Below, piece after piece: positions 7,680 through 62,009 of a stretch of DNA of 64,000 nucleotides. The DNA comes from Rebecca billardiae RCC1528 (lineage: Eukaryota > Protista > Haptophyta). A program made the translations under genes and the position numbers. A model generated the notes under the pieces. That model did not search any database. It saw only the letters and a list, made by a program, of their open reading frames with translations, and was not told the DNA's origin. Numbering within the stretch: the stretch's first letter is position 1; each line of letters begins with the position of its first letter. Location: NCBI GenBank assembly GCA_965240325.2, contig OZ251226.1, positions 248,001 through 312,000 of the forward strand. The letters run 5' to 3'.

Positions 7680-7951
7680 TATGTTTTAATGTGCACACTT
7701 GGTTAAGGCGTGATTGACGCCATCCAACACTGCACTTAAAGACACCGCCAAAAAACAGACCGGCGCAGGCAGGTGAGGGGCCGCGCGCTGCCGCACCTCA
7801 GACGAGGCGGCCATTGCAGCAAGCGGCCGCCCCGCGCTCGGCCAGGCACGCGCTCGAGTTGACTAAGATCGAGTTAATTAACGTGCACACTTCTGACACT
7901 TCGGCCGCCGGTCTGATCACCCGAAGCCCGTTATAAATCAAGGGGAATTTA
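7680..7951 (-). repeat. degenerate interspersed repeat
   Basis: 7745-7858 matches 54110-54215 and 15530-15640 (rc); 7898-7951 matches the TTATAACGGGCT family. Confidence 0.65.
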
Positions 7952-14918: not shown

Positions 14919-15662
14919 ATAATACAATATTATAATTTATTTAAATCACATATATATAGCTATATATATATATATATTGCCGCGATCCGCACATCATCCG
15001 ATCCTGAATGAAGGCATCAGCTGCAACTTAGAGTCGTCGCAGCGGTAGTTTAACATCGTCGTCAACTAAACAAGCCACTACAAGGTCGCCGACACGATCA
15101 CGGCATATCATCGTCTGATCGATCGATTATATATCAGCGCAGTGCGTCAGTGATGGTATATATATATATATATGCTAGCTGAGTTATTGTCATCTGGAGT
15201 CTAGTCACTAGTCGGCGCAGCGTCGAGCCCGTCGTCTGAATAACGTCTGATGTCTCTGATCAAGGCCCTTGCTCTGATGCCACTTGTAACTTGACGACAT
15301 GCAGGGCAACCACCGCGACCAGGGCCGCCTAATTAAGCAGACTTAACGTAGTCTTATAATATTATAAATAAGAAGTCGCGCTGATGTTTCGCTTGCTTGG
15401 CCCGATGCCGATGCCGATGGCCGGTCGTGCATGGCCACCGCCATGGGCCTGACACTGACAGTGACTGCCGCACCGTAGCTACGCCTGCTGCATGAGTCAC
15501 TGCTCCGTCTGCTGACGGCTAGTACTATGAGCGCGTGCCTCCGAGCGCGGGGCGGCCGCTTGCTGCAATGGCCGCCTCGATGAGGTGCGGCAACGCGCCC
15601 CTCACCTGCCTGCGCCGGTCTGTTTTGTGGCGGTGTCTTTGTGGAGTGTTGCATGGCGTCAA

Positions 15663-17566
15663 TTACGGTTGTATAACCGCTCGGTTATGCGGGTATAACT
15701 CACCGGTAGCCCTCATGAGGGCGGGCTGGCAGCCAGGGTCCGGCTGCCTGGAGGTTTTCCGGTCGTCAAGCCGAGCCAGGCCCGGATTGGGCGCGGGCCT
15801 GGATTGGCTCAGCAGCTTGGCAAGCGATGCGCATCTGGGTGCGGCCGCGCTCGCTGGCTGCACCCGCGGCGCGGCGGCCGGCGTGGCTGCTCTGGTCACC
15901 GCTGCGCTGGTGGCTGCTCCTCCTCTGGGAGTTGTTTCTTCCAGGTGCGTGTGCGTCGGCGGTAGGCCGCCCTCAGCCCTCGCTCTCTCCACTCGTGCAC
16001 CTGCCCTGCTTGCTCTCTGCTTTCGATGGGGGCGCCTCGGAGCCGCTTCGAGGCGTCCCCGTCTGCAATCTTCTCATGCTCTATCTGCTTTCGACGGGGG
16101 CGCCTCGGAGCCGCTTCGAGGCGTCCCCGTCTGCAATCTATCTTCTCATGCTCTGCTTTCGATGGGGGCGCCTCGGAACCGCTTCGAGGCGTCCCCGTCT
16201 GCAATCTTCTCATGCTCTGCTTTCAATGGGGGCGCCTCGGAACCGCTTCGAGGCGTCCCCGTCTGCAATCTTCTCATGCTCTGCTTTCGATGGGGGCGCC
16301 TGGGAACCGCTCCCAGGCGTCCCCGTCTGCAATCTTCTCACGCTTCGCAGTCTCGCTTGCCTTCATCGCCTGGCGGGTGGGTGCTGCTCTTTCCTTCTCT
16401 GCCGCCTCCTCTGCAGTCTGCCGTGCACTGCTGTGTGTGGGATGCGACCTGCTACCTTATCTGACGCTACGCGTGCGTGTCTCGCGCCTGCTTCCCGCCT
16501 GCGCCGCCGCCGCCGCGCATGTCTTCGTGCCCACTGTCTCATGCCGTCTGGATCGTCCTTACTCATACAACCCTGCTGGGAGCCCCTCTGGGCCTCTGCC
16601 GCCTTCGGTCCTCGCGCTACCCCTTCGGCGGCCTCGGCCTCTTCGGGCCCCCGGCCACCACCCCTGCGGGGTGTGGCATTCCACACCTCCTTCTGGGTGG
16701 AGGCCCTCGAGGCCTCTGCCTCCTGCGGCGCCGCGCTCTGCCCAAACTTGCGTTGGGGGGGGGCGTCGGCTGCCAGCGCCTGCGGTCTACGTGCTCCATC
16801 GAGTACTTCCTCTTCGGCGTCTAGGCGGTCATCGGCTTCTGTCGGCGTAGTTGCTCGAATGCATCGGCGAGTCCTTCCTGGTCGGCGTCGCATCCTGGAC
16901 GGCTTCGGGGGTGTGACCTAGTCACCTCACGCGTTTATCAACGCGGCCCCCACCTCAATCTACTCTCATGTGGGTCTACCGAGTGAGTTATGGTTGTATA
17001 ACCGCTCGGTTATGCGGGTATAACTCACCGGTAGCCCTCATGAGGGCGGGCTGGCAGCCAGGGTCCGGCTGCCTGGAGGTTTTCCGGTCGTCAAGCCGAG
17101 CCAGGCCCGGATTGGGCGCGGGCCTGGATTGGCTCAGCAGCTTGGCAAGCGATGCGCATCTGGGTGCGGCCGCGCTCGCTGGCTGCACCCGCGGCGCGGC
17201 GGCCGGCGTGGCTGCTCTGGTCACCGCTGCGCTGGTGGCTGCTCCTCCTCTGGGAGTTGTTTCTCCCTGCCCTCCCACCCTGCTGGTTGCTGGGTGGGCA
17301 TGGCCTTGGGTGCGCGCGGTGTCGGGGGGGTGGAGGCCCTCGAGGCCTCTGCCTCCTGCGGCGCCGCGCTCTGCCCAAACTTGCCCTCTTCGGCGTCTAG
17401 GCGGTCATCGGCTTCTGTCGGCGTAGTTGCTCGAATGCATCGGCGAGTCCTTCCTGGTCGGCGTCGCATCCTGGACGGCTTCGGGGGTGTGACCTAGTCA
17501 CCTCACGCGTTTATCAACGCGGCCCCCACCTCAATCTACTCTCATGTGGGTCTACCGAGTGAGTTA
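15663..17566 (+). mobile_element. miniature split-direct-repeat element (A-x-B-A-y-B), Ngaro/PAT/TOC-like non-autonomous YR retroelement
   Basis: A 15663-15939 = 16988-17264; B ~16695-16990 = ~17328-17566 (57-bp deletion in the second B); TTA at left end, B/A junction and right end. Confidence 0.75.
16012..16340 (+). repeat. 64-bp tandem repeat x5, each with a 17-bp stem hairpin
   Basis: units at 16017, 16085, 16153, 16217, 16281. Confidence 0.95.
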
Positions 17567-17689
17567 TACGCCTACCGGGAGGTGTTACGCGGATTACGAC
17601 ACTTGCGGGACGAACGGCGGCGGGGCCGCTCGCGAGACGCGGGTGGAAGCTCCGGCCTGCTTGCCAACCTGAGAAGCGAGCGCTGCTCG

Positions 17690-19079: not shown

Positions 19080-22000
19080 ATGCCGCGCCGGCAGCGCTAC
19101 CCTACGCCGGGCCCGGGCTACTACGAGGTCGGCTCAGCAGCGTGGTGCGACTGCCAGCCTCAGCAGCAGGCGCCGTTCGGCTCGAGCTCGCGGCGATCCA
19201 CGTTTGAGGCCGCGCAGAGCAACACAGGGCCCGGGCAGTATAACGTGAGCAACTACCGCAGCGTGGGCTGCGAATGGCGCTCGTCGCCCAACGCGACGGC
19301 CCATGCGGGCACGCACACGTTCATCTACCGCGCAAAGCGCCGGACGCTACACGAATCGCCCGACTACACGCCGCCGCCAGGCGCATACGAAGTGAAGGAT
19401 TCGTGGAGTCATCGCGGATCCGAGTCGGCATTCCGCTCAGGATCACCGCAGCGCGCACAACAGACGCGCAGCGGCACGCCGGGAGCGGGAGCGTACGACG
19501 TACGTGAGGGTGCGATCAGCGACAGGGGCACCTCGGCCGCGTTCAAGAGCAAAGAGCGCCGCTTCCGCGATGACGAGCCGAGTGGCCCGCTCGGCCCGGG
19601 CGCCTACGAGGCGCATGAGTACCACTCCATGTCGCGCGGTATGCGCCTCCTGCGCCCTACCCGCGCCCCCGCTGCCGTGCTCGTGTGCGTGTGCGATCTC
19701 CGCGAGCAGCTCCCGAAAGGCCGTAGGCCCAGCGCGCGTGCGCGCGGATGAGAGCATGCCCTACACAGCGCATGCGACGGCTGCATGCGTGTGCACGTGC
19801 AGCATGCATGCGCGCCACTCGCGCCTGGCACTCAAAGCTCACACCACGCCCACTCGGCGTCCCTCTCTACCCTGCGCCTCACCATGCTCGCCCACAGGCT
19901 CGTCCCCACGTCGCCGCAGCTCGCCCGCGTTCGCATCGCGCACGCCGCGCGACACCTCGCCAAACAGCCGCGACCCGAGCCCCGGACCCGGCGCGTACGA
20001 CGTGCAGCGCCCGCGGCATCGGGACTCGAACCGGCCATCCGCTGCCTTCCGCTCGGCTCGAAGGCGTGAGAAGAGCGACCAGACCGGCGAACCCGCGGCG
20101 TACGACCCCAAGGTGCGCGCCATCGGCTCTCGTGGCACTTCCTTTGGCTTCAAGTCACGCAGCTCGCAGCGAGATCTCGGCCACGGCGGCGAAGCCACGC
20201 CGGGCCCAGGCCACTACGACTTGCGCGGCGCCGAGGGCAAGGGCACGACATTTGGCTTCAAGTCGAGCTCGGGCCGTGACCTGCACGGTGCCTCGGACAC
20301 GCCCGGCCCCGGCAGCTACGACCTGCGAGGGCCTGAGGGCAAGGGCACCACCTTCGGCTTCAAGTCTGGGTCAGGCCGCGAGCTGCACGGCGCGTCGGAC
20401 ACGCCGGGCCCGGGCAGCTACGACCTGCGCGGCATGGAGGGCAAGGGCACGACTTTCGGCTTCAAGTCGCGCTCAGGCCGCGAGTTGCACGGCGCGTCGG
20501 ACACGCCGGGCCCGGGCAGCTACGACTTGCACGGCGCGCAGGGCAAGGGCACGACGGCGGCGTTCAAGTCACGCTCGGGCCGCGACCTGCGTGCTGACTC
20601 GGACACGCCGGGCCCGGGCAGCTACGACCTGCGCGGCATGGAGGGCAAGGGCACGACTTTCGGCTTCAAGTCGCGCTCAGGCCGCGAGCTGCACGGCGCG
20701 TCGGACACGCCGGGCCCGGGCAGCTACGACTTGCACGGCGCGCAGGGCAAGGGCACGACGGCGGCGTTCAAGTCACGCTCGGGCCGCGACCTGCGTGCTG
20801 ACTCGGACACGCCGGGCCCGGGCAGCTACGACCTGCGCGGCATGGAGGGCAAGGGTACGACTTTCGGCTTCAAGTCGCGCTCAGGCCGCGAGCTGCACGG
20901 CGCGTCGGACACGCCGGGCCCGGGCAGCTACGACCTGCACGGCGCGCAGGGCAAGGGCACGACGGCGGCGTTCAAGTCACGCTCGGGCCGCGACCTGCGT
21001 GCTGACTCGGACACGCCGGGCCCGGGCAGCTACGACCTGCGCGGCATGGAGGGCAAGGGCACGACTTTCGGCTTCAAGTCGCGCTCAGGCCGCGAGCTGC
21101 ACGGCGCGTCGGACACGCCGGGCCCGGGCAGCTACGACCTGCACGGCGCGCAGGGCAAGGGCACGACGGCGGCGTTCAAGTCACGCTCGGGCCGCGACCT
21201 GCACGGCGGATCGGATACGCCGGGCCCGGGCAGCTACGACCTGCGCGGCATGGAGGGCAAGGGTACGACTTTCGGCTTCAAGTCGCGCTCAGGCCGCGAG
21301 CTGCACGGCGCGTCGGACACGCCGGGCCCGGGCAGCTACGACCTGCACGGCGCGCAGGGCAAGGGCACGACGGCGGCGTTCAAGTCACGCTCGGGCCGCG
21401 ACCTGCACGGCGGATCGGATACGCCGGGCCCGGGCAGCTACGACCTGCGCGGCATGGAGGGCAAGGGTACGACTTTCGGCTTCAAGTCGCGCTCAGGCCG
21501 CGAGCTGCACGGCGCGTCGGACACGCCGGGCCCGGGCAGCTACGACCTGCACGGCGCGCAGGGCAAGGGCACGACGGCGGCGTTCAAGTCACGCTCGGGC
21601 CGCGACCTGCACGGCGGATCGGATACGCCGGGCCCGGGCAGCTACGACCTGCGCGGCATGGAGGGCAAGGGTACGACTTTCGGCTTCAAGTCGCGCTCAG
21701 GCCGCGAGCTGCACGGCGCGTCGGACACGCCGGGCCCGGGCAGCTACGACTTGCACGGCGCGCAGGGCAAGGGCACGACGGCGGCGTTCAAGTCACGCTC
21801 GGGCCGCGACCTGCGTGCTGACTCGGATACGCCGGGCCCGGGCAGCTACAACCTGCGCGGCATGGAGGGCAAAGGTACGACTTTCGGCTTCAAGTCGCGC
21901 TCGGGCCGCGAGCTGCACGGCGCGTCGGACACGCCGGGCCCGGGCAGCTACAACCTGCACGGCGCGCAGGGCAAGGGCACTACTGCGGCGTTCAAGTCAC

Positions 22001-25000
22001 GCTCGGGCCGCGACCTGCGTGCTGACTCGGACACGCCGGGCCCGGGCAGCTACGACCTGCGCGGCATGGAGGGCAAGGGCACGACTTTCGGCTTCAAGTC
22101 GCGCTCAGGCCGCGAGCTGCACGGCGCGTCGGACACGCCGGGCCCGGGCAGCTACAACCTGCACGGCGCGCAGGGCAAGGGCACTACTGCGGCGTTCAAG
22201 TCACGCTCGGGCCGCGACCTGCGTGCTGACTCGGACACGCCCGGCCCCGGCAGCTACGACCTGCGCGGCATGGAGGGCAAAGGTACGACTTTCGGCTTCA
22301 AGTCGCGCTCGGGCCGCGAGCTGCACGGCGCATCGGACACGCCGGGCCCGGGCAGCTACGACCTGCGCGGCATGGAGGGCAAGGGCACGACTTTCGGCTT
22401 CAAGTCGCGCTCGGGCCGCGATCTCCACGGCGCGTCCGACACGCCGGGCCCGGGCAGCTACAACCTGCACGGCGCGCAGGGCAAGGGCACGACGGCGGCG
22501 TTCAAGTCGCGCTCGGGCCGTGACCTGCACGGTGCCTCGGACACGCCTGGCCCCGGCAGCTACGACCTGCGCGGCACCGATTCACGCGGCACTACTGCGG
22601 CGTTCAAGTCGCGCTCGGGCCGCGACCTGCGTGCTGACTCGGACACGCCGGGCCCGGGCAGCTACGACCTGCGCGGCATGGAGGGCAAGGGCACGACTTT
22701 TGGCTTCAAGTCGCGCTCAGGCCGCGATCTCCACGGCGCGTCCGACACGCCGGGCCCGGGCAGCTACGACCTGCACGGCGCGCAGGGCAAGGGCACGACG
22801 GCGGCGTTCAAGTCACGCTCGGGCCGCGACCTGCGTGCTGACTCGGACACGCCGGGCCCGGGCAGCTACGACCTGCGCGGCATGGAGGGCAAGGGTACGA
22901 CTTTCGGCTTCAAGTCGCGCTCAGGCCGCGAGCTGCACGGCGCGTCGGACACGCCGGGCCCGGGCAGCTACGACTTGCACGGCGCGCAGGGCAAGGGCAC
23001 GACGGCGGCGTTCAAGTCACGCTCGGGCCGCGACCTGCGTGCTGACTCGGACACGCCCGGCCCCGGCAGCTACGACCTGCGCGGCATGGAGGGCAAGGGC
23101 ACGACTTTTGGCTTCAAGTCGCGCTCAGGCCGCGATCTCCACGGCGCGTCCGACACGCCGGGCCCGGGCAGCTACGACCTGCACGGCGCGCAGGGCAAGG
23201 GCACGACGGCGGCGTTCAAGTCACGCTCGGGCCGCGACCTGCGTGCTGACTCGGACACGCCCGGCCCCGGCAGCTACGACCTGCGCGGCATGGAGGGCAA
23301 GGGCACGACTTTCGGCTTCAAGTCGCGCTCGGGCCGCGATCTCCACGGGGCGTCCGACACGCCGGGCCCGGGCAGCTACGACGTGCGCGGCACCGATTCG
23401 CGCGGCACTACTGCGGCGTTCAAGTCACGCTCGGGCCGCGACCTGCGTGCTGACTCGGACACGCCGGGTCCGGGCAGCTACGACCTGCGCGGCATGGAGG
23501 GCAAGGGTACGACTTTCGGCTTCAAGTCGCGCTCAGGCCGCGATCTTCACGGCGCGTCAGACACGCCGGGCCCGGGCAGCTACGACGTGCGCGGCACCGA
23601 TTCACGCGGCACTACTGCGGCGTTCAAGTCGCGCTCGGGCCGCGACCTGCGTGCTGACTCGGACACGCCGGGTCCGGGCAGCTACGACCTGCGCGGCATG
23701 GAGGGCAAGGGCACGACTTTCGGCTTCAAGTCGCGCTCAGGCCGCGATCTTCACGGCGCATCAGACACGCCGGGCCCGGGCAGCTACGACGTGCGCGGCA
23801 CCGATTCACGCGGCACTACTGCGGCGTTCAAGTCACGCTCGGGCCGCGACCTGCGTACGGACTCGGATACGCCGGGTCCGGGCAGCTATGACCTGCGCGG
23901 CATGGAGGGCAAGGGCACGTCTTTCGGCTTCAAGTCGCGCTCAGGCCGCGATCTTCACGGCGCGTCAGACACGCCGGGCCCGGGCAGCTATGATCACGCC
24001 GCGAGCTCATCTGGAGGCGTTGGCGCGTCTGCGGCTTTCCGATCCCGCTCTCGGCGGGACCTCGGCGGGGCGGATACCTCTACGCCTGGCCCGGGCAGCT
24101 ACGACCTGCGCGGCATGGAGGGCAAGGGCACGACTTTCGGCTTCAAGTCGCGCTCGGGCCGCGATCTCCACGGCGCGTCCGACACGCCGGGCCCGGGCAG
24201 CTACGACCTGCGCGGCACCGATTCGCGCGGCACTACGGCGGCGTTCAAGTCACGCTCGGGCCGCGACCTGCGTACGGACTCGGATACGCCGGGTCCGGGC
24301 AGCTACGACCTGCGCGGCATGGAGGGCAAGGGCACGACTTTCGGCTTCAAGTCGCGCTCGGGCCGCGATCTTCACGGCGCCTCGGACACGCCAGGCCCGG
24401 GCAGCTATGATCACGCCGCGAGCTCATCTGGAGGTGTTGGCGCGACTGCTGCTTTCCGATCCCGCTCTCGGCGGGACCTCGGCGGGGCGGATACCTCTAC
24501 GCCTGGCCCGGGCAGCTACGACCTGCGCAGTGGTGAGGGCAAGGGCACAACTTTTGGCTTCAAGTCGCGCTCGGGCCGTGAGCTGCGTACGGAGTCCGAC
24601 ACGCCGGGCCCGGGCAGCTACGACTTGCACGGCGCGCAGGGCAAGGGCACGACGGCGGCGTTCAAGTCGCGCTCGGGCCGCGACCTGCGTGCCGACTCAG
24701 ACACGCCGGGCCCGGGCAGCTACGACCTTCGTGGTGCAGAGAGCAGAGGTACCACTGCAGCTTTCAGGTCTCGCTCTGGCCGCGATCTCGGTGCCGCCTC
24801 GGATTCGCCGGGGCCGGGCAGCTACGACGTGCGCGGCACCGATTCACGCGGCACTACTGCGGCGTTCAAGTCACGCTCGGGCCGCGACCTGCGTGCTGAC
24901 TCGGACACGCCGGGCCCCGGCAGCTACGACCTCCGTGGTGCAGAGGGCAGAGGTACCACTGCAGCATTCAGGTCTCGCTCTGGCCGCGACCTCGGTGCCG

Positions 25001-27217
25001 CCTCGGACTCGCCAGGCCCGGGCAGCTACGACGTGCGCGGCGCGGAGGGCAAGGGCACGACCGCGGCCTTCAAGTCGCGCTCGGGTCGCGACCGCCACGC
25101 CGACCCGGACATGCCAGGGCCCGGCAGCTACGACGTGCGCGGCGCGGAGGGCAAGGGCACGACCGCAGCCTTCAAGTCGCGCTCGGGTCGCGACCGCCAC
25201 GCCGACCCGGACATGCCAGGGCCCGGCAGCTACGACGTGCGCGGCGCGGAGGGCAAGGGCACGACCGCAGCCTTCAAGTCGCGCTCGGGTCGCGACCGCC
25301 ACGCCGACCCGGACATGCCAGGGCCCGGCAGCTACGACGTGCGCGGCGCGGAGGGCAAGGGCACGACAGCAGCCTTCAAATCGCGCTCGGGTCGCGATCT
25401 CGGAGGGCCGTCGGACTCGCCGGGCCCAGGCAGCTACGATGTGCGCGGCGCGGAGGGCAAGGGCACGACCGCGGCCTTCAAGTCTCGCTCCGGACGCGAG
25501 CGCCAAGCTGACGTGGACATGCCGGGGCCCGGCAGCTACGATGTGCGCAGCGCGGAGGGCAAGGGCACGACTGCAGCCTTCAAGTCTCGCTCGGGTCGCG
25601 ATCGCCACGCCGACTCGGACACGCCCGGACCGGGCAGCTACGACCTGCGCGGCGCGGAGGGCAAGGGCCCCTCGATGGGCCGCGGCTCGCGCTTTGGCGA
25701 GGCGGGCTCGAGCGACCAGGGCCTCATGTACGACATCTCCTGGTACCGCGCCGTCGGCTCCAACAAGGCTTCGGGCGCACAAGCGGCCTTCAGCTCGCGC
25801 ACGCACAGGTCGACGCACAGGTCGGAGGACGAGGGCGTCGGTCCGGGCGCGTACAACGTCGATGCGTACCAGTCAATTGGCAACGGTATGTGGCACGCGC
25901 TGGCCCATCGCGCTTGCGCCGCAGCGCGCCGTCGCGATGAGACTCATCACACCTGTCGTACCCGCTGCGCGCCCAACCGTGCCCGCAGCCTCAAGGCGCG
26001 AGGCGGGGACATCCTCGTTCAAATCGCGCTCAGGCCGGACCACTGACCTCGGCGACACTGAGGCGCCCGGGCCGGGTGCCTACGACGTGCGAACGCAGAG
26101 GGCATCGGATCGGCCATCGGCAGCCTTCAGGTCTCGAACCAAGCAGCGCGATGTGGGGCCGCGCGCTGACGAGCACCCGGGAGTCGGCGCGTACGAGGTC
26201 TCGCGCGGCGGCGTGGGTGGCCGCGGTACGTCGGCTGCCTTCAAGTCGAGGCAGCGCCGCTTCCGCGACCTGGAGGAGGAGGCGGCGCGTCGGTCGGAGG
26301 GCGGACTCATGTACGACATCTCCCACTACCGCGCGGTCGGGGCCGGCTCGGCACACACCGCGCGCTCAGCCTTTGAGTCGCGTTCGGACCGCAGGCTGCA
26401 CGGTGGTGCGGACGATACGCCTGGGCCTGGGAGCTACCCGCAGGAGGTGGGCACGCTCCACTCCACGACCGTCCGCAGCCAGTCGCGCGAGTCCGCCGCG
26501 TTCCGATCGCGCACGGTGCAGCGCACGGCGTGGACAGAGGGCGACTCGCCCGGCGCCGGCGCGTACGACCCAGGCGGTGGCGCCATCAGCGGCAGGGGCA
26601 CGACGGCCGCCTTTGTGAGTCGCGAGCGCCGCTTCCGTGAGCGCGACGATGAGGGCTCGCAGGTTGGGCCCGGCGCGTACAGCGTCGAGACGCACGGCGC
26701 CATTGGTCACGGTGAGTGCCGCGCCTCCTCGCCTCCTGTGCTGCGACGCGCGCCCGCGCACGCGTGCGCTGCGGCTGCATCCCACGCGGCGTGCAGCCTG
26801 CCTGGGGCATGCGGCTGTGAAGCGCAGCGGCCGTTGGTTGCACACGCTCACTCTCGTCCTCCCTCCCTCCCGTCCGCTTCCGCTGCAGCCTCCGATCGCA
26901 CGAGGGACCAGGGCACCGCTAGCTTCAGGTCGCGCTCCGGCCGTGAGCATGGCTACGACAGCGACACGCCTGGCCCCGGCGCGTACGATTCCGGGCGGGC
27001 GACGGCGGCCATCCGCGACGGTCGAGGGACCACCTCGCCCTTCCGCAGCCGGCAGACGCGCTCGGGTGACTTGCAAGGCGAGGGCTCGGGCCTCATGTAT
27101 GACATCTCGTGGTACCGAGCAGTCGGCGCGGGCTCACCGCACAACGCGCGATCGGCATTCAACTCTCAGACGGAGCGCACTGACTTTGCCTACGACGACG
27201 TCTCGCACTCGCCGTAG
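19080..27217 (+). CDS. giant PGPGxY (SHIPPO-rpt / STPG / ODF3-like) repeat protein; introns 19639-19897, 25886-25988, 26712-26888
   Basis: ~54 tandem ~34-aa repeats TPGPGSYD....G.GTT..FKSRSGR; three phase-1 GT..AG introns join frames into ~2500 aa. Confidence 0.85.
20195..25680 (+). repeat. 102-bp coding tandem repeat with alternating A/B (204-bp) higher-order unit
   Basis: alternation of LRGMEGKGTTFGF..HGAS and LHGAQGKGTTAAF..RADS units. Confidence 0.95.
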
Positions 27218-27411: not shown

Positions 27412-30400
27412 CACAGCAACGACTTCTTTTTTAAAGCGGCCGTTAGCGTGTCCAGCGGCCAGATTAATTTTCGAAAAATTACTATGCGCTGCGCGCGCGC
27501 CCCTAGGGGGCGGCGCGCGCGCGCGGCTGGTCCCCCCTGCATGCCCGCACCGTCAGCTGCCTGATTGCCGCTACCCAGCCCCGCTACCGTCGCGCGCGAC
27601 ATCCGCGCCGTAAATCACCGTCACCGAGCGGTCCGGCGAGCGCGCCGCCATCAATTTGCTCCTGAGTGCCGAAAACTCCTTCTCCGGAAGCCCAGCCTCC
27701 TCGCGCAGGAGCTTGCGCGCCGTCATGCACTCCGCGATCAGGTCGATCGCGTCGGTCTCCGCCCTGCGCTGCCATTCGCGCTGCCGCTTGGCGTACTTCT
27801 TCAGCCAGAGCCGCCGCACCTTGTCGCCGAACTCCTCTGCCCACGTCGCAAGCGACACGCGGCGCACGAGCTGCGCGACCGTCGAGATGTGCGGCTCCGC
27901 CGTCGACTTCTTCCCCTCGGCGTACTCGCGGACGAATGAGTCGAGTGACTTGCGCGCGTGCACGAGCGGCATCGCACGCTTGGTCACCTGCACGAAATGC
28001 CCCTGCACCTGCTCGTCCGCGAGCTGCACGAGGCGCCCCCGCCGCCTGAGGCGAGACGCCGTCTGCGCCCGCCTCCGTGACCGCCCAGACGTTGAAGCGG
28101 AGCGGTGGGACGTTGTGCGAGCCCTGGCCGGCGAGGCTGGCGAGGCTGACGTAAGCGCCGGTGCACGCCACGATGGCCTTCTGCTCCTCCGCGTAGTCGG
28201 CCGCCTCGGCGCCGCCGCCAAAACCGCCGCCGGCCGCGCTGCCGCCTGCCGAGGCAGTGCTGCCACCGAGGCCGCGCTGCTGCGCGCCGCCGCCGGCCGC
28301 GCCGCCGCCGGCCGCGCCGCCACCAGCCGCACCACCACCCGCACTGTCAGCCGCGCGGCTGGCCGCGCCACATGCCGCGCCACCGGCCACGCGGACGCCA
28401 GCACCGGCTGTGCCGCTAGCCACGCCGCTGCCACTGCCGGCCGCGCCGCCCACGCCGCCGCCCGCGCCCGCGCCCGCGCCCACGTTGCCAGCCGCGCCCC
28501 CGGCCGCGCCCCCGGCCGCGCCGCCGGCCGCGCCACCGGCCGCGCGGACGCCAGCGCCAGCGGTGCCGCCAGCCACGCAGCTGCCGCTGCTGCTGCCACC
28601 AGTGCTGCTGCTGCCGCCCGCACCGGCCGCGCCGCCGCCGGCCGCGCCACCGCCGGCCGCGCCGCCGCCGGCCGCGCCGCCGCCGGCCGCGCCGCCGCCG
28701 GCCGCGCGATCGCGAGCGCTGTCAGCCGCGCCGCTGTCCGCGCCGCCGGCCGCACCTCCGGCCGCGCCTCCAGCCGCGCGGACGCCAACGCCAGCTGTGC
28801 CGCCAGCCACGCCACTGCAGCTGCCGCCCGCGCCGCCCGCGCCGCCGCCAGCACCCGCGCCCGCGTTGCCAGCCGCGCCGCCGGCCGCGTCCGGCCGCGT
28901 CGCCGGGCGCACCGCCGCCTGGCGCGCAGTTGTCGGGCGTGCCGCCGTCGGGCGCGCCGCCACCGGGCCCGCCATCGCCCGCGCTGTCAGCCGCGCCGCC
29001 GGCCGCGCCGCAGGCCGCGCCACCGGCCGCGCGGACGCCAACGCCGGCTGTGTCGCCAGTCACGCCGCTGTCGCTGCAGCTGCCGCCGCTGCTGCCGGCC
29101 GCGCCGGCCGCGCGCGGCCGCGCCGCCGGCCGCGCCGCCGCCGGCAGTGCCGCCGCCGGCCGCGCCACCGCCCGCGCTGTCAGCCGCGCCGCTGGCCGCG
29201 CCGCCGGCCGCGCCACCGGCCGCACGGACGCCAGCGCCGACTGTGCCGCCAGCCACGCCGCTGCCGCTGCCGCTCGCGCCGGCCGCGCCGCCGCCCGTGC
29301 CCGCGGACGCGCCCGCGTTGCCAGCCGCGCCGCCCGCCGCGCCGCCGGCCGCGCCGCCGACCGCGCAACCGGCCGCGCGGACTCCAGCGCCGGCGGCACC
29401 GCCAGCTACGCCGCTACCGCTGCCGCTGCCGCCGCTGCCGCCGGCCGCGCCGCCGGCCGCGTCGCCGGCCGCGCCGCCTGCAGCGCCGCCAGCCGCGCCG
29501 CCCTGCCGCGCTGGCCACGTGCAGCGGCGGCAGCTGGCGGCGCCGGTCGCGGTGGGAGCCGGCCGCTCCGGATCACGTCATTGATCCCGTCGGCGTCCGC
29601 ACTCCATAGCTCGGGCATGTCCGAGTCCGGCCGCTCCGAGATGGCGATCGCCTCCGACGACGCGAGCGCAACACCCTCATAGTTGCGCACGATGGCGATC
29701 GTGGCCGCGCGCGAGTGCGCTGCGTTTGGCCCGTGTCCGCCGAGAGGAGGAGGACATGCGGCTGCCCGCGCGGGCGCGCGGACTTGCCGTAGTGCTCCAA
29801 GCGATCCAGCACGGCGCCCACGGCCTGCGCCCACGGCCGCGCCGCCGACTCGCTGCCGATCATCATCACGCCCGCGCCCGCGTGCTCGCGATTGCGCAGC
29901 GCGCTCTCACGTGAGCCAGCCACCGGCGGCGGGATCGGGTGGCGCATGCCCAGGTTGAGCCACGTCGAGAACTCTCGGGCTGGCGCGAGCCCACGATGCT
30001 CAGTGTGCGGTCCTTCTCGCGCGCCTAGTGCACGACGCCCTCGTCGTCGAGCGAGGTGAAGGCATGCAAGACGAGCGCGTCTCACGAGAAGAGCCGCAGC
30101 TTGGCTACACGCAGCAGGTTGTTCTTCTTCCGCTGGGCCTTGATGGCGACGAGGCTGTTGACGCTGCGCTTGACCTCCGCCAGGTAGTTCTCGTTCGGCA
30201 TGATCGAGTGGTCCACCTCGCTCGCGGCCTCGCGCGCGCGCAGCTTGAGCATCTCGTGCGGCTGAGCGCCGCGGCCATGCGCAGCCATGCAGATGCGGCA
30301 GAGACGTGGCGCCCGATGCGTTAGGCACCTTTGCGATGCAGCTTGGGCTTCCTAGGCTTCGCGCAGGAACGCTTGCCCTTGCCCACGGTGAGCACAGCCG

Positions 30401-32317: not shown

Positions 32318-33215
32318 ATTGACACTGGCCCACAGGGGGGGGTTCCGAATTGGTCCCCCGACCTCGAGCTCGATGGCTGCCGCACGTGCGTGCCCAGCGT
32401 GCCTCGCGCGTGTGCGTGCACGGTAGGGCGTCCCGACAGCGGCGGGGTGGCGTAGATGGTCGCATGGGAGGTGCATCCGTGTGTCGGAGACGTCTCGGCG
32501 CCTCGGTGGCGTGCCCACACCTCTCCTTGTCGCCGCTTGCCTGCTGCGTGCTCGGCCAGCCGTTTGGAGTGCACGCCTGCACGTGCACGGCCAGTGTCGG
32601 GCGGATCGAGCCGTAGCGAGTGTGCTTGCGGGTACTCCCACCCGATGCGGCTCTCTGCCGCCGTCGCAAGCCCTCGCGCGTGTCCTGGAACCTGCCGAAT
32701 CTAGTCGGGCATGCGCCCAACATGCTCGCGAACATTGCCCAGGAATCGCATCAGAAATGCGCTATTTGAAAATAAAACTGGACAGCATGTGGTGTACCAC
32801 CATGACAACACTGAACACGTCGTGGGTTGGAGTGCACGGCTTGGGATTGATGCACGAGAGCTACTACGACGGCGGCAGAGAGCCGCATCGGGTGGGGGTA
32901 CCCGCAAGCACACTCGCTACGGCTCGATCCGCCCGACACTGGCCGTGCACGTGCAGGCGTGCACTCCAAACGGCTGGCCGAGCACGCAGCAGGCAAGCGG
33001 CGACAAGGAGAGGTGTGGGCACGCCACCGAGGCGCCGAGACGTCTCCGACACACGGATGCACCTCCCATGCGACCATCTACGCCACCCCGCCGCTGTCGG
33101 GACGCCCTACCGTGCACGCACACGCGCGAGGCACGCTGGGCACGCACGTGCGGCAGCCATCGAGCTCGAGGTCGGGGGACCAATTCGGAACCCCCCCCTG
33201 TGGGCCAGTGTCAAT
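32318..33215. mobile_element. foldback/MITE element with 349-bp near-perfect inverted arms and 200-bp spacer
   Basis: 32318-32666 is the reverse complement of 32867-33215 (one mismatch seen); AT|TG...CA|AT ends. Confidence 0.9.
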
Positions 33216-33327
33216 TGGCCGCGAGGAAAGGAGCGACCTCATCATTCGGCACTCACGAAAACACGCGCGATGACTAGGTCAGTGCTGAACCGTTCCACAC
33301 TGCGTGAACCCGATCAACCCCCGCGCG

Positions 33328-34998: not shown

Positions 34999-35166
34999 CG
35001 AGTATATAGCCCGAGTCAGAGAGAGAGACCGAGCCGAGTATTCTTTCGCCGGAGAGCGCGCTATATCAGAGTCCGTCCGCTCATAAGTATACGTAGACTT
35101 ACTCACTTAGACGGATGACGCCACAGTACGGTCCGCGAGACAGTCTCAGTCAGAGAGCAGAGAGAG

Positions 35167-35212
<46 letters not shown>

Positions 35213-38670: not shown

Positions 38671-39651
38671 TCTCTTTGTTGGCCGAAGATACGCTAGCGT
38701 CCTTCCGACCACAAAATCGCGAAAAACGCCGCAATCGCTTGGTTTTCAGACCTCGGCCCCAGCGGCAAATGCGTTCAGCGACCTCGAAAACCTTGGGACC
38801 CGCTCGGGTTTGGGCGTCAGGTGCCGTAGGCGACCGTCCGACCGCCGGAACCGTCCAAAAGTCGAAGGACGCTAGCGTATCTTCCTTTTGAGGGTGCCGG
38901 TAGTACGCTAGCGCCGGCTATGTTCGAGACCTCAGAGGCTAAGACTTCAGCCAGAGGTGCCCCAGGAGGTGCCCAACATGATTGACTTAATGGGCAGCAA
39001 GCGCCGCGCACGTCAGAGAGCTCCACGACTGACGTTTTGAGTGACACGCTCAGCGACGCGCTCGCGGGGCCCGGGCTCGTCGTCGGACGACCAACAGCGC
39101 TGAGGGGTCACGGCGACAACACACAGGGCGGGCTAGTCGGCGGGACGTGCGGCATTCACGACTCCATCAACCGTTGGCGAGCGCGCGGTGGCAGCGGCGC
39201 GCTGGTCGCACCTGCAACGCCCTGCTCAGGCACCGCGGCTGGCCACGCCCACGGCTCGCGCCGCAGCGGCCGCGCGTAGCTTGCACTGGCGCAATTGGCG
39301 TGGCGTGCGGCAGCGCGGTGGCACTCGGGGCGATGACGTTCACAATGATAAGTTGCTCCATCGCCACAGCCCGCTCGAAGCCCTGCGCCGCGCCGCTTTC
39401 CTCCGCCTCACGCCGCGCAGCGCCGCAGTCATCCGCCAAATCACGACCGTCGTCGAGCGCGGTCGCCTCTGGAGGGCCGTCGTCGCCATCAGAAGAGAAA
39501 TTCTCGTCATGTGAGTTGTCGTTGAGGTCCCAGGCATCAATCGCGCCCGCGGCCGCCCTCGCGCGCGCCCCCTACGCGCCGTCAGAGCTCACGCGCGCCG
39601 GGGCGCCATCGAAGATACGCTAGCGTATCTTCCCCGCGGCCAACAAAGAGA
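38671..39651. mobile_element. non-autonomous TIR element, TCTCTT...AAGAGA termini, TA TSD
   Basis: 15-bp TIR TCTCTTTGTTGGCCG; TA both sides; 22-bp palindrome GAAGATACGCTAGCGTATCTTC at 39611-39632 with imperfect copies at ~38685 and ~38864. Confidence 0.8.
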
Positions 39652-39654: not shown

Positions 39655-39750
39655 AGCCACTACTCCGCCATGCCCGGCTCGTATGGTGTCGGGTACGAGA
39701 CTCAGACTGGAGCTGGATGCAGGATATGGCGGTCGTGGCGCGCGGCGGCG
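39655..39750 (-). repeat. decayed B-repeat fragment of the 44915/49627 element
   Basis: AGCCAC..TCCGCCATGCCCGGCTCGTA..GTCGGGTACGA..CTGGAGCTGGATG matches 49631-49710. Confidence 0.7.
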
Positions 39751-40081
39751 TCACGGCGTCAGTCACGGCGCGGGCGGCGGCGACGCTGCGACGGGCCGCG
39801 GCGTTACGAATTCGAATCGTGATGGGGTAAATAATAATAATAAAAAAAAATATACTACGACGAATAACTACTACGATATGACGACGACATTATTTACTGC
39901 TACTATACTATACGATACTCGATAGGCGGGCGGCATAGCCGGCATAGCTAGGCTCGGCGTCAGAGACTGCACGGGCGACTGAGTGACCGACTTGGGCGAG
40001 CCGAAGCCAGACTGCCGAGTCGGGCCATGCGGCCAGAGTGACCCAGTGATCGAGTGCGGCTGGGAATACCTGACAGACATC

Positions 40082-44914: not shown

Positions 44915-46570
44915 GTGGCGTTATAGGGAACCTATAACTGAGTGTCTATGAGCGACGCCAAGAATCCGGCTCGCACGGCATTCCTGCGTTGTCCTGTGCG
45001 CACCGCCGCGCGCAGGAGTCCTGGTGCGCTGCCAATCTGGCCCACAGCGGCGCACCTGCAGGACTCGGTTGGTTACCGCTCACATCGGATCGATCAGGCT
45101 TCGCTCTCGGGGGCGCCATGGGGCTGCTCACGACGAAGGCGCCGAGCTGGGCAAGGGAATCGCCTGCATCGGGCACTGCCGGGTGCACGCTCCGCTGCAG
45201 GAGGTGCACCGCAGTCGCCGCAGCCCCTCTGCTCGGTAAGGTCGCTGGCTGTCTGTGTGGCCCGGCTCCCCGCCTGATCGTTCGGCGGCGCGACGTCATC
45301 ATCTGTCTTCGCCGCGTCGCCCCTCATGCAATGGTCTCTTGCTCTCGCCGCTGTCGCGTCAACCCGCACGCTTCATCGTTTGAGATACGCGCTCGCCTCG
45401 CGCCCGTGCGTCGCGCGGGTGCGGCGCACTCTGACGCGTGTCTGCTCGCCGCGCGTCGCGATCGATCGTGCGCGCGCGGCCGCGCAGTCCTCGTCTCTTC
45501 TATTTCTAAACGGGATTCATCAACGACTACTTGGACGCCCGCTCCAACTTATAAACGGGACTCGCGGGCGCCCTCTCGACCTCGGGCAGCAGCTCAACCG
45601 CCACGCCGCTGCCAGCGCCCGCCGTCGTTCGTTGCTCAAATCCCAACATAGCTAACCTGATCGTTCCATGATTGATCATTGTGGTCTGTCTACTCCACGA
45701 CGCCGCGCGCCGCGACCATCCAGCTCCAGAGTCCATTCGTACCCGACGCCTTGTACGAGCCGGGCATGGCGGAGTGGCTAGACGTGGCGTTATAGGGAAC
45801 CTATAACTGAGTGTCTATGAGCGACGCCAAGAATCCGGCTCGCACGGCATTCCTGCGTTGTCCTGTGCGCACCGCCGCGCGCAGGAGTCCTGGTGCGCTG
45901 CCAATCTGGCCCACAGCGGCGCACCTGCAGGACTCGGTTGGTTACCGCTCACATCGGATCGATCAGGCTTCGCTCTCGGGGGCGCCATGGGGCTGCTCAC
46001 GACGAAGGCGCCGAGCTGGGCAAGGGAATCGCCTGCATCGGGCACTGCCGGGTGCACGCTCCGCTGCAGGAGGTGCACCGCAGTCGCCGCAGCCCCTCTG
46101 CTCGGTAAGGTCGCTGGCTGTCTGTGTGGCCCGGCTCCCCGCCTGATCGTTCGGCGGCGCGACGTCATCATCTGTCTTCGCCGCGTCGCCCCTCATGCAA
46201 TGGTCTCTTGCTCTCGCCGCTGTCGCGTCAACCCGCACGCTTCATCGTTTGCCCGCCCGCCCACCCTCGGCCTCTGGCGGATATGGAAGCACTGCAGTGT
46301 CAGCGAGCCATCAGCCTTAATCGACCTTGCTCAGTGACTGACGACTCGCGGGCGCCCTCTCGACCTCGGGCAGCAGCTCAACCGCCACGCCGCTGCCAGC
46401 GCCCGCCGTCGTTCGTTGCTCAAATCCCAACATAGCTAACCTGATCGTTCCATGATTGATCATTGTGGTCTGTCTACTCCACGACGCCGCGCGCCGCGAC
46501 CATCCAGCTCCAGAGTCCATTCGTACCCGACGCCTTGTACGAGCCGGGCATGGCGGAGTGATGGCTAGAC
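44915..46570 (+). mobile_element. miniature split-direct-repeat element A-x-B-A-y-B, family 2
   Basis: A 44915-45382 = 45784-46251; B 45559-45783 = 46343-46570; junction CTAGAC|GTGGCG; AT flanks. Confidence 0.8.
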
Positions 46571-46719
46571 ATATATATATATAGCAGTTAGCAGTAGTCG
46601 TATGCCACATAATCGGCGCCGGCCCGCCGTGGTGCCACTGGCCCGATGAGAGCAGGGCTCAGATGACAGAGTCACTGAGAGTCAGATGACAGCTACACGG
46701 AAGGCAGACTCAGGCTCGC

Positions 46720-48264: not shown

Positions 48265-48570
48265 GCATGACCCATGCGCGCAGCTTGACAAACCGTCGGC
48301 CGTCGTCAGGACCGCGCTGCGCGGCAGGCTCCTGGCCGCCGTCAAGTTGTGTTCACGAGACGCCAAGCGGAGGCGCCAATAATCTGATGCGCGCGGCGAT
48401 GGGGCGACCTCGTGACGACTGAGCAACCCGGCGGCGGAGCTTGGGCAGACTTGGAGTGCTTTCTTCAGCAAACTGCATGCACCCAGTTGCCGATTTCATG
48501 CTGCGGTTAAGCAGTCGCTCCGTGACCTTTCCGCACGTGTATTGTAGTGTCCGCGCGCGTGAATAGCGCG

Positions 48571-49626: not shown

Positions 49627-51285
49627 GTCTAGCCACTCCGCCATGCCCGGCTCGTACAAGGCGTCGGGTACGAATGGACTCTGGAGCTGGATGGTCGCGG
49701 CGCGCGGCGTCGTGGAGTAGACAGACCACAATGATCAATCATGGAACGATCAGGTTAGCTATGTTGGGATTTGAGCAACGAACGACAGCGGGCGCTGGCA
49801 GCGGCGTGGCGGTTGAGCTGCTGCCCGAGGTCGAGAGGGCGCCCGCGAGTCGTCAGTCACTGAGCAAGGTCGATTAAGGCTGATGGCTCGCTGACACTGC
49901 AGTGCTTCCATATCCGCCAGAGGCCGAGGGTGGGCGGGCGGGCAAACGATGAAGCGTGCGGGTTGACGCGACAGCGGCGAGAGCAAGAGACCATTGCATG
50001 AGGGGCGACGCGGCGAAGACAGATGATGACGTCGCGCCGCCGAACGATCAGGCGGGGAGCCGGGCCACACAGACAGCCAGCGACCTTACCGAGCAGAGGG
50101 GCTGCGGCGACTGCGGTGCACCTCCTGCAGCGGAGCGTGCACCCGGCAGTGCCCGATGCAGGCGATTCCCTTGCCCAGCTCGGCGCCTTCGTCGTGAGCA
50201 GCCCCATGGCGCCCCCGAGAGTGAAGCCTGATCGATCCGATGTGAGCGGTAACCAACCGAGTCCTGCAGGTGCGCCGCTGTGGGCCAGATTGGCAGCGCA
50301 CCAGGACTCCGCCTGCGCGCGGCGGTGCGCACAGGACAACGCAGGAATGCCGTGCGAGCCGGATTCTTGGCGTCGCTCATAGACACTCAGTTATAGGTTC
50401 CCTATAACGCCACGTCTAGCCACTCCGCCATGCCCGGCTCGTACAAGGCGTCGGGTACGAATGGACTCTGGAGCTGGATGGTCGCGGCGCGCGGCGTCGT
50501 GGAGTAGACAGACCACAATGATCAATCATGGAACGATCAGGTTAGCTATGTTGGGATTTGAGCAACGAACGACAGCGGGCGCTGGCAGCGGCGTGGCGGT
50601 TGAGCTGCTGCCCGAGGTCGAGAGGGCGCCCGCGAGTCCCGTTTATAAGTTGGAGCGGGCGTCCAAGTAGTCGTTGATGAATCCCGTTTAGAAATAGAAG
50701 AGACGAGGACTGCGCGGCCGCGCGCGCACGATCGATCGCGACGCGCGGCGAGCAGACACGCGTCAGAGTGCGCCGCACCCGCGCGACGCACGGGCGCGAG
50801 GCGAGCGCGTATCTCAAACGATGAAGCGTGCGGGTTGACGCGACAGCGGCGAGAGCAAGAGACCATTGCATGAGGGGCGACGCGGCGAAGACAGATGATG
50901 ACGTCGCGCCGCCGAACGATCAGGCGGGGAGCCGGGCCACACAGACAGCCAGCGACCTTACCGAGCAGAGGGGCTGCGGCGACTGCGGTGCACCTCCTGC
51001 AGCGGAGCGTGCACCCGGCAGTGCCCGATGCAGGCGATTCCCTTGCCCAGCTCGGCGCCTTCGTCGTGAGCAGCCCCATGGCGCCCCCGAGAGTGAAGCC
51101 TGATCGATCCGATGTGAGCGGTAACCAACCGAGTCCTGCAGGTGCGCCGCTGTGGGCCAGATTGGCAGCGCACCAGGACTCCGCCTGCGCGCGGCGGTGC
51201 GCACAGGACAACGCAGGAATGCCGTGCGAGCCGGATTCTTGGCGTCGCTCATAGACACTCAGTTATAGGTTCCCTATAACGCCAC
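49627..51285 (-). mobile_element. second, inverted copy of split-direct-repeat family 2
   Basis: reverse complement of 44915-46570; internal junction at 50413/50414. Confidence 0.85.
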
Positions 51286-56875: not shown

Positions 56876-56935
56876 TATATTGGTACTCCCACCAAAGTCG
56901 CACCGCCAAGGCCGGCCGCGGCGGAACCGCACGCC

Positions 56936-57853: not shown

Positions 57854-57860
57854 TAATTAT

Positions 57861-61984: not shown

Positions 61985-62009
61985 TGATATATATACCCAA
62001 TATATATAT

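What the first reader, a model, noticed from the sequence alone, without database searches (positions are those of the whole stretch)
15663..17566. Second, unrelated family with the same A-x-B-A-y-B architecture and a TTA crossover core
Seen: A (277 bp) and B (~240-295 bp) each present twice; TTA occurs at the left boundary (caaTTAcggttg), the B/A junction (gagTTAtggttg) and the right boundary (gagTTAtacg), with no conventional TSD. No visible similarity to family 2 outside a terminal motif. A shared trinucleotide between circle junction and target is what tyrosine-recombinase integration (DIRS-type) predicts. Two independent mini-families in 64 kb suggest a prolific system.
Basis: partly seen in the sequence, partly recalled or inferred. 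Interest (0 to 1): 0.8.

Follow-up and report, generated by a model that had tools for sequence, protein, structure and literature searches.

The report
Miniature split-direct-repeat retroelement, no genes
The 1.9-kb block is a gene-less mobile element with the A1-x-B1A2-y-B2 repeat layout typical of tyrosine-recombinase (Ngaro/PAT/VIPER-type) retrotransposons; it is probably a new non-autonomous member of that known kind, but no recombinase or reverse-transcriptase partner could be found.

Summary
A (15667-15939 and 16992-17264) and the B core (16809-16991 and 17385-17567) are each present twice at 100% identity. The internal B1|A2 junction is exactly the two outer ends joined. TTAC, TTAT and TTAT sit at the left end, the junction and the right end.

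The block is an insertion. It interrupts a dispersed repeat whose uninterrupted paralogue reads straight across the site. Spacers x and y are unrelated, so tandem duplication plus deletion fails.

Family 2 (44915-46570 and 49627-51285) has the same layout. Its two copies differ by three changes in A and B, and each change is shared by both members of the pair within a copy. This means the ends are rebuilt from one template, as in LTR or DIRS-type replication.

Both families share three further features:
- a nested palindrome across the B|A junction;
- a polypyrimidine motif directly after A2;
- AT-rich targets.

Best reading: a non-autonomous split-direct-repeat retroelement of the DIRS order.

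Three points are not shown:
- No RT or YR partner was found.
- No further copies were found. Family 1 is single-copy in this window.
- The "TTA crossover core" cannot be told apart from a 2-bp AC duplication, and family 2 lacks such a core.

Verdict: new member of a known kind, moderate interest.

The parts
15529..15666 (+). Left flank. This is a copy of dispersed repeat R, the target into which the element inserted. It ends in TTAC (15663-15666).
   Evidence: It is 90-93% identical to 7709-7855 (-) and 54107-54215 (-). Homology runs up to the element boundary and resumes with (AC)GCCT after it.
15667..15939 (+). A1, the terminal repeat. It starts GGTTG. Its first ~50 nt hold an inner hairpin and a segment complementary to the B end.
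   Evidence: 100% identical to A2; fold results.
15940..16694 (+). Spacer x, unique and without credible coding capacity. It contains five tandem 64-68-nt units (16015-16344), each with a 33-nt hairpin.
   Evidence: ORFs here have no Pfam match. It is unrelated to y.
16695..16991 (+). B1. It consists of a 57-nt block (16695-16751), 57 nt absent from B2 (16752-16808), and a 183-nt core ending GAGTTAT.
16972..17037 (+). Internal B1|A2 junction (boundary at 16991/16992). It equals the outer ends joined and forms a 62-nt nested palindrome. It is a candidate recombination or end-joining site.
   Evidence: DNA fold -19.4 kcal/mol, z = -6.1, 0 of 200 shuffles as good. The two genomic ends taken alone give z of about 0. 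Family 2's junction has the same layout (z = -2.8).
16992..17264 (+). A2, the internal copy of A.
17265..17327 (+). Spacer y. Its first 17 nt (17265-17281) are a polypyrimidine tract, which reads as polypurine on the - strand. The tract is shared with family 2 at the same position.
   Evidence: 12/13 match, 3 of 300 shuffles as good, and both tracts lie directly after A2. Sequence.
17328..17567 (+). B2, the terminal repeat (57-nt block plus 183-nt core). It ends in TTAT (17564-17567).
17568..17573 (+). Right flank, ACGCCT. This is the continuation of repeat R after the insertion. The first in-frame ATG of the SDR gene lies 122 nt from the element end, at 17690.
44915..46570 (+). Family 2, copy 1, same layout. 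A1 is 44915-45382, x 45383-45558, B1 45559-45783, A2 45784-46251, y 46252-46342 (polypyrimidine 46252-46267), B2 46343-46570.
49627..51285 (-). Family 2, copy 2, inverted and 99.2% identical to copy 1. Its left flank is unrelated. It lies in (AT)n, as copy 1 does.
39656..39770 (-). A remnant of about 115 nt related to the family 2 B end. Its last ~45 nt are almost identical to that end. It is cut by a 981-bp TIR element (38671-39651).

Best explanation
Positions 15667-17567 are a young, gene-less (non-autonomous) retroelement with split direct repeats, A1-x-B1A2-y-B2. It is of the kind mobilised by DIRS-order elements (Ngaro, PAT, VIPER type), which encode reverse transcriptase/RNase H and a tyrosine recombinase.

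Proposed mechanism:
1. A transcript lacking the outer parts of A1 and B2 is reverse-transcribed.
2. The missing ends are rebuilt from the internal copies A2 and B1, so each new copy has A1 = A2 and B1 = B2.
3. The ends are joined into a circle whose B|A junction is the nested palindrome seen at 16972-17037.
4. A recombinase supplied in trans inserts the circle at an AT-rich site that partly resembles the junction.

Shown here: the layout; that the internal junction equals the joined ends; insertion into a repeat; end regeneration in family 2; the conserved junction architecture.

Inferred: the RNA intermediate, the circle, the tyrosine recombinase, and which strand is the sense strand.
For: 1. 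The repeats and their order are confirmed.
2. B1|A2 reads GAGTTAT|GGTTG, which is exactly the right end followed by the left end.
3. The left flank is a copy of repeat R. The uninterrupted paralogue at 7709-7855 (-) reads ...GTCAATCACGCCT. Here the same string is split by the element.
4. Spacer y is unrelated to x in both families, so the second unit is not a deleted copy of the first.
5. The two family 2 copies have unrelated left flanks. All three differences between them in the repeats are shared by both members of the pair within a copy: a 3-nt indel and a G/A in A, and a C/T in B. Spacers x and y are identical between copies. This is the LTR-like signature of ends rebuilt from one template. 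It matches the demonstrated role of the internal repeat region in DIRS-1 (PMC7192593).
6. The junction palindrome has z = -6.1. The same nested layout occurs in family 2 although the sequence is unrelated.
7. A polypyrimidine motif lies directly after A2 in both families.
8. The layout matches published SDR elements, including a short spacer between A2 and B2 in VIPER/SIRE (PMC8547959, PMC8969392, PMC6681497).
9. Non-autonomous relatives are known: TOC1 (PMC9940879) and SIRE.
Against: - No RT, RNase H or tyrosine-recombinase ORF was found among 30 long ORFs of the window. Degenerate, frameshifted remnants were not searched.
- Family 1 is single-copy in the window, and no copy was found in any collection.
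- DIRS-order elements are said to lack TSDs, and a 2-bp AC duplication fits the empty-site proxy at least as well as a shared core.
- R homology continues only 6 nt beyond the insertion, so the empty-site argument is thin.
- B2 lacks 57 nt that B1 has. This does not fit simple copying of B1 unless a template slip or a later deletion occurred.
- The concerted differences in family 2 could also come from gene conversion between adjacent direct repeats.
- The sense strand is unresolved. The polypurine tract points to the - strand. The canonical long-spacer-first layout and the better folding point to the + strand.
Confidence: 0.6

Rival explanations
1. It is a replicative element of another class that also rebuilds its terminal repeats. 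An example would be a permuted or rearranged LTR/TRIM-like retroelement inserted by a DDE integrase with a very short (2-bp) target duplication. No tyrosine recombinase would be involved.
For: AC occurs on both sides of the element, and the AC-duplication model gives the best fit to the paralogous empty site (226 against 224). A polypurine tract on the - strand lies directly upstream of the internal complete repeat unit, where an LTR element keeps its PPT. The concerted differences resemble LTR behaviour. Family 2 sits in (AT)n, which is compatible with a 2-bp duplication.
Against: No complete repeat unit sits at either end. There are only half units (A on the left, B on the right), there are no TG...CA ends, and no tRNA primer-binding site was recognisable by eye. 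LTR elements make 4-6-bp duplications. No integrase or RT is present in the window. The half-unit ends with a complete unit inside are exactly the SDR layout (PMC8969392).
Confidence: 0.15
2. It is a DNA element moved as a double-stranded circle by a tyrosine recombinase (Crypton-like), with no RNA step. The A-x-B-A-y-B form would be a hetero-dimer made when a short variant circle (A-y-B) integrated at the junction of a resident long variant (A-x-B).
For: The junction is a palindrome with inverted ~13-nt arms around a 6-nt spacer, like a recombinase core site. The target partly resembles the junction: the left flank GTCAATTAC matches the B end GTGAGTTAT at 6 of 9 positions. Short microhomology repeats flank Cryptons (PMC13465315).
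Against: Two unrelated families would both have to be hetero-dimers, with the long unit first in each. Both family 2 copies carry the identical dimer, so the dimer itself is the moving unit. The concerted differences in A and B are not expected from copying a double-stranded DNA dimer. Cryptons have no long terminal repeats.
Confidence: 0.1
3. It is not mobile. It would be a local tandem duplication followed by deletion or insertion, kept uniform by gene conversion.
For: Family 1 is single-copy in 64 kb, and no other copy was retrieved. Repeat identity of 100% is also what a very recent duplication gives.
Against: Spacer y shares nothing with x. The outer boundaries coincide with a break in repeat R, and the R paralogue is uninterrupted. 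The same layout recurs in family 2 at two loci with unrelated left flanks. Junction architecture and the post-A2 motif are conserved between the two families although their sequences are unrelated.
Confidence: 0.05

Closest known systems
Ngaro / VIPER-type split-direct-repeat retrotransposons (DIRS order), such as the Cafeteria burkhardae Ngaros and T. cruzi VIPER
   Same: The order A1 - internal - B1A2 - (short spacer) - B2 is the same. Paired repeats are up to 100% identical. The internal junction equals the joined ends. There is no long target duplication (PMC8547959, PMC6681497, PMC8969392).
   Different: There are no gag, RT/RNase H or YR genes, and total length is 1.9 kb against about 6 kb. 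The spacer between A2 and B2 is 60-90 nt. Membership by protein phylogeny cannot be tested.
Known non-autonomous DIRS-order elements: TOC1 of Chlamydomonas and SIRE of Trypanosoma cruzi
   Same: They are gene-less derivatives that keep the terminal and internal repeats and presumably depend on a partner (PMC9940879, PMC6681497).
   Different: SIRE corresponds to A2 - 30 bp - B2 only. TOC1 is 5.7 kb (from memory: Day et al. 1988). Here the complete A1...B2 set is kept in under 2 kb, and there is no sequence similarity to either.
DIRS1-like elements (inverted terminal repeats plus internal complementary region)
   Same: A short sequence (here TTA/TTAY) occurs at both ends and once at the internal junction, as reported for the NTT trinucleotide of DIRS1-like elements (PMC3266345). 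An internal copy of the ends is needed to rebuild them (PMC7192593).
   Different: The repeats here are direct, not inverted. The B end is complementary to a subterminal part of A, so the junction is itself a palindrome. Family 2 shows no shared trinucleotide.
TRIM / LTR retrotransposons
   Same: Both are small, gene-less and have repeats regenerated at each cycle. A polypurine tract (on the - strand) abuts the internal complete repeat unit.
   Different: The ends here are half units, not full LTRs. There are no TG...CA ends, no 4-6-bp duplication and no recognisable primer-binding site.

Membership tests
DIRS-order retrotransposons with split direct repeats (Ngaro / PAT / VIPER type) | Split direct repeats in the order A1 ... 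B1A2 ... B2 | tested here: met
   A is 273 nt twice at 100%. B is 183 nt plus 57 nt twice at 100%. B1 abuts A2 directly.
DIRS-order retrotransposons with split direct repeats (Ngaro / PAT / VIPER type) | The internal B1|A2 junction equals the element's two ends joined | tested here: met
   GAGTTAT|GGTTG at 16991/16992. The right end is ...GAGTTAT and the left end is GGTTG....
DIRS-order retrotransposons with split direct repeats (Ngaro / PAT / VIPER type) | Terminal repeats are rebuilt from the internal copies at each cycle | tested here: met
   Tested on family 2 only. All 3 differences between copies in A and B are shared by both members of the pair within a copy. Family 1 has one copy, with 100% identical pairs but a 57-nt indel in B. 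Gene conversion is not excluded.
DIRS-order retrotransposons with split direct repeats (Ngaro / PAT / VIPER type) | No target-site duplication; integration at a short sequence shared with the circle junction | tested here: inconclusive
   Against one paralogous empty-site proxy, the AC-duplication model scores 226, a TTAY core 224 and a TTA core 219. Family 2 lies in (AT)n and has no shared core.
DIRS-order retrotransposons with split direct repeats (Ngaro / PAT / VIPER type) | Encodes RT/RNase H and a tyrosine recombinase, or has a partner with the same A/B repeats that does | tested here: not met
   The element has no ORF with a Pfam match. No RT, RH or YR was found among 30 long ORFs of the window. 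A partner elsewhere in the genome cannot be sought with these tools.
DIRS-order retrotransposons with split direct repeats (Ngaro / PAT / VIPER type) | Dispersed multi-copy family | tested here: inconclusive
   Family 1 has 1 copy in 64 kb. Family 2 has 2 copies plus 1 remnant. Nothing was found in the viral, metagenome or prokaryote collections or the protein index.
DIRS1-like (ITR + ICR) | Inverted terminal repeats with an internal complementary region | tested here: not met
   The terminal repeats are direct. Only a ~20-nt B end is complementary to a subterminal part of A.
LTR retrotransposon / TRIM | A complete identical LTR at both ends, TG...CA, 4-6-bp duplication, and PBS and PPT | tested here: not met
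   The ends are half units (A left, B right), running GGTTG...GTTAT. At most 2 bp are duplicated. Only a PPT-like tract is present, on the - strand.
Crypton (YR DNA transposon) | Carries a YR gene, has no long terminal repeats, and is flanked by short microhomology repeats | tested here: not met
   There is no YR gene and long repeats are present. Only the short flanking microhomology is compatible.
Penelope-like element with pseudo-LTR | A tandem pair in which the second copy is 5'-truncated; RT plus GIY-YIG | tested here: not met
   Both units start at the same A start and differ in unrelated internal spacers. No RT is present.

The most novel reading that the evidence does not exclude
These could be a lineage-specific group of miniature split-direct-repeat elements in which the ends themselves form a nested palindrome: the B end pairs with a subterminal part of A, around an inner A hairpin. 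A single-stranded cDNA could then bring its own two ends together and be circularised without an internal complementary region. That would be a new variant of DIRS-type replication. The polypurine tract next to the internal repeat unit would hint at an LTR-like plus-strand primer. Alternatively, the mobilising enzyme may not be a tyrosine recombinase at all.
Probability: 0.15. Interest if true: 0.6.

Novelty: new member of a known kind. Interest (0 to 1): 0.4.

Why it matters
Tyrosine-recombinase retrotransposons are rare and their replication is poorly understood. Gene-less derivatives that keep the whole A1...B2 repeat set in under 2 kb mark out the minimal cis-acting parts:
- the junction palindrome;
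- the tract after A2;
- the B end, which is also conserved in a decayed remnant.

The family 2 pair gives sequence-level evidence that the ends are rebuilt from internal copies. For DIRS-1 this has been shown only by experiment.

The host is an intron-poor, GC-rich flagellate or alga from a poorly sampled lineage, where such elements are hardly documented.

For annotation, the element lies 122 nt upstream of the start codon of a short-chain dehydrogenase gene and may affect its promoter.

Tried and rejected
- Exact-pattern scans with a 27-mer from the family 1 A start found nothing in viral contigs, metagenome contigs or genome contigs.
- A 22-mer conserved between family 2 and its remnant found nothing in the viral or metagenome collections. 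It gave two actinobacterial hits that match over only 22-32 nt and are chance.
- Orthologous empty sites were sought through the neighbouring SDR gene. The best relative is only 51% identical (Pavlovales sp. CCMP2436), so no close genome is available.
- The ALDH gene has an exact copy on one 2-kb Logan contig (ERR14847148). The organism's reads are therefore public, but only as short contigs, and the next-best hits are 55-62% identical.
- A search with an alignment of four reading frames of A and B, meant to catch ORFs called on other copies, scored nothing. This alignment of unrelated frames is an unorthodox query, so the blank is weak evidence.
- Exact look-up of 10 element and flank ORFs found none in the collection.
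- Rfam found no family at gathering score in the window. Relaxed thresholds gave only sub-threshold miRNA-like hits on the tandem hairpins, and no ribozyme. No tRNA was found.
- Retrozyme, Helitron and Penelope pseudo-LTR readings were rejected on structure.
- The strand of the RNA could not be settled. The + strand folds better, but this may only reflect its T>A composition. The polypurine tract is on the - strand.
- The big representative-protein search and structure prediction were not used, because there is no credible protein to submit.

Full report
**Observation.**
- A1 (15667-15939) and A2 (16992-17264) are identical over 273 nt.
- The B core (16809-16991 and 17385-17567, 183 nt) is identical in its two copies. 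So is the 57-nt block before it (16695-16751 and 17328-17384).
- B1 has 57 extra nt (16752-16808), bounded by CTTGC/CTTC microhomology.
- Spacer x (15940-16694) holds five 64-68-nt tandem units, each with a 33-nt hairpin.
- Spacer y is 63 nt (17265-17327).
- TTAC, TTAT and TTAT lie at 15663-15666, 16988-16991 and 17564-17567.
- The internal junction reads GAGTTAT|GGTTG, which is exactly the right end followed by the left end.

**Context.** The window comes from a GC-rich (about 65%), intron-poor eukaryote.
- It carries single-ORF genes for a PPR protein, an RsmB-type methyltransferase, a short-chain dehydrogenase (SDR), a giant SHIPPO-repeat protein, an aldehyde dehydrogenase, a WD40 protein and sulfotransferase paralogues.
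- The closest SDR relative is 51% identical, from Pavlovales sp. CCMP2436.
- The best non-self ALDH relatives are 55-62% identical.
- The lineage is therefore poorly sampled, and I leave the taxon open.
- One 2-kb Logan contig (run ERR14847148) matches the ALDH locus exactly.
- The element ends 122 nt upstream of the first in-frame ATG of the SDR gene.

**It is an insertion, not a local duplication.**
- The 138 nt to the left of the element (15529-15666) are a copy of a dispersed repeat, R. R is also present at 7709-7855 (-) and 54107-54215 (-).
- The copy at 7709-7855 reads ...GTCAATCACGCCT without interruption. Here GTCAATTAC is followed by the 1.9-kb block and then by ACGCCT.
- R homology continues only 6 nt past the block, so this proxy is suggestive rather than strong.
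- Spacers x and y share no similarity in either family. A tandem duplication followed by deletion therefore cannot give the structure.

**Family 2 supplies the key evidence.**
- It has the same layout at 44915-46570 (+) and 49627-51285 (-): A 468-471 nt, x 176, B 225, y 91.
- The left flanks of the two copies are unrelated. Both copies lie in (AT)n.
- The copies differ at three events inside the repeats: a 3-nt indel and a G/A in A, and a C/T in B.
- Every one of these is present in both A's, or both B's, of the same copy. Spacers x and y are identical between copies.
- Parallel mutation cannot explain this. Either the pairs are rebuilt from one template at each transposition, or gene conversion keeps them uniform.
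- Rebuilding of ends from internal copies is the proposed role of the internal repeats of DIRS-order elements. It was shown to be essential in DIRS-1 (PMC7192593).

**Features shared by the two otherwise unrelated families** (A, B and x are not alignable).
1. *Junction palindrome.* The B|A junction is a nested palindrome. In family 1, the last ~20 nt of B pair with nt ~28-47 of A, around an inner hairpin formed by the first ~27 nt of A. The fold gives -19.4 kcal/mol, z = -6.1, with 0 of 200 shuffles as good. Family 2 has the same layout with different sequence (z = -2.8). The genomic ends taken separately do not fold. In family 1 the junction can also be read as two inverted ~13-nt arms around a 6-nt spacer (GGTTGT), with the B|A boundary at the spacer edge. 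This resembles a recombinase core site (inference).
2. *Tract after A2.* Directly after the last base of A2, both families carry a 16-17-nt polypyrimidine tract (17265-17281 and 46252-46267). They match at 12 of 13 positions, with 3 of 300 shuffles as good. On the - strand this is a polypurine tract abutting the internal complete repeat unit, which is where an LTR element keeps its plus-strand primer.
3. *Composition.* The + strand is T-rich and A-poor in both families.
4. *Targets.* Targets are AT-rich islands in GC-rich DNA and partly resemble the junction. The family 1 left flank GTCAATTAC matches the B end GTGAGTTAT at 6 of 9 positions. AGCAGT(TA) follows an AT-rich stretch to the right of both family 2 copies and of a B-like remnant at 39656-39770.

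**Comparison with known elements.**
- The order A1 - internal - B1A2 - B2 defines split-direct-repeat elements of the DIRS order (PMC8969392, PMC4157794, PMC8547959).
- VIPER has about 30 bp between A2 and B2, and its derivative SIRE is gene-less (PMC6681497).
- TOC1 is a non-autonomous DIRS element of Chlamydomonas (PMC9940879).
[quoted passage not shown] The TTA/TTAY pattern here fits that description.

**What is not shown.**
- *The crossover core.* Against the one empty-site proxy, a 2-bp AC duplication (score 226), a shared TTAY core (224) and a TTA core (219) cannot be separated. Family 2 has no sequence shared between its ends and its junction. The TTA core is therefore possible for this copy, but it is not a property of the system.
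- *The enzymes.* None of 30 long ORFs in the window has an RT, RNase H or tyrosine-recombinase domain, and the element's own ORFs match nothing. Frameshifted remnants could not be searched.
- *Copy number.* No further copy of either family was found by DNA pattern scans (the two hits are chance), by a protein-word search with translated frames or by exact look-ups.
- *The sense strand.* The polypurine tract favours the - strand. The canonical layout and the better RNA folding favour the + strand, but the folding difference may be a composition effect.
- *The 57-nt difference between B1 and B2.* It needs a template slip or a later deletion.

**Verdict.** The block is most likely a young, non-autonomous split-direct-repeat retroelement of the DIRS order (confidence about 0.6).

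Rival explanations:

| Rival | Confidence |
|---|---|
| Another class of repeat-regenerating retroelement with a 2-bp duplication | 0.15 |
| A recombinase-moved DNA hetero-dimer | 0.10 |
| A non-mobile duplication | 0.05 |

It is a new member of a known kind. The junction palindrome, the conserved tract after A2 and the concerted variants are useful leads for specialists. Overall interest is moderate.

No spliced gene model was needed.

Noticed in passing
15529-15666 (+), 7709-7855 (-), 54107-54215 (-): A dispersed ~140-nt repeat 'R', 88-93% identical between copies. Two copies lie just upstream of a gene start and point toward it (SDR ATG at 17690; PPR ORF start at 7670). There is no Rfam or tRNA match. 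It could be a promoter-associated repeat or a small TE.
   Followed up: partly
32319-33215: A foldback-type element with 349-nt inverted arms (99.7% identical) around a 200-nt loop, about 90 nt upstream of the aldehyde dehydrogenase ORF. The public Logan contig for that gene starts inside its right arm.
   Followed up: partly
38671-39651: A 981-bp element with 14-nt terminal inverted repeats and TA on both sides (Tc1/mariner- or Stowaway-like). It is inserted into the remnant related to the family 2 B end. It also carries an inner 22-nt palindrome near each end.
   Followed up: partly
39656-39770 (-): A remnant of about 115 nt related to the family 2 B end. Its last ~45 nt are nearly identical to family 2, the rest about 70% identical. 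It lies about 100 nt downstream of an ORF ending at 39871 and in the same direction. The B end therefore seems to be the most conserved part of the family.
   Followed up: partly
46571-46625 and 49560-49626 (-): The right flanks of the two family 2 copies share (AT)n, AGCAGTTA and TATGCCAC over about 30 nt before diverging. The remnant also has AGCAGT after an AT-rich stretch. This is either a short tail that belongs to the element or a strong target preference. It is unresolved.
   Followed up: partly
44282-44381 and 44780-44873: Two ~100-nt near-perfect palindromes, 94-97% alike, bracket about 400 bp immediately left of family 2 copy 1. They look MITE-like.
   Followed up: no
16289-16321: The fifth unit of the 64-nt tandem array in spacer x carries a compensatory C-G to G-C swap, plus a G.T to G-C change, in its 33-nt hairpin. 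The stem is kept.
   Followed up: partly
19748-27217; 28288-29511: A 2489-codon ORF contains 53 tandem 102-nt units (with a 204-nt higher-order period) encoding SHIPPO/PG-rich repeats. An adjacent tract is 82% GC with a 12-nt period.
   Followed up: no
48547-49416, 56627-57853, 61013-61984; repeats 56938-57855 = 61084-62006 and 59093-60176 = 63470-62415 (inverted): A cluster of sulfotransferase-4 domain paralogues embedded in kb-scale direct and inverted duplications (78-96% identity).
   Followed up: no
L001 (Logan ERR14847148_22375) = window 33188-35188: The only public sequence found from the same organism is a 2001-nt contig, 100% identical to the window. It ends in a C-run and an (AG)n microsatellite. 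The run accession may identify the source organism.
   Followed up: partly
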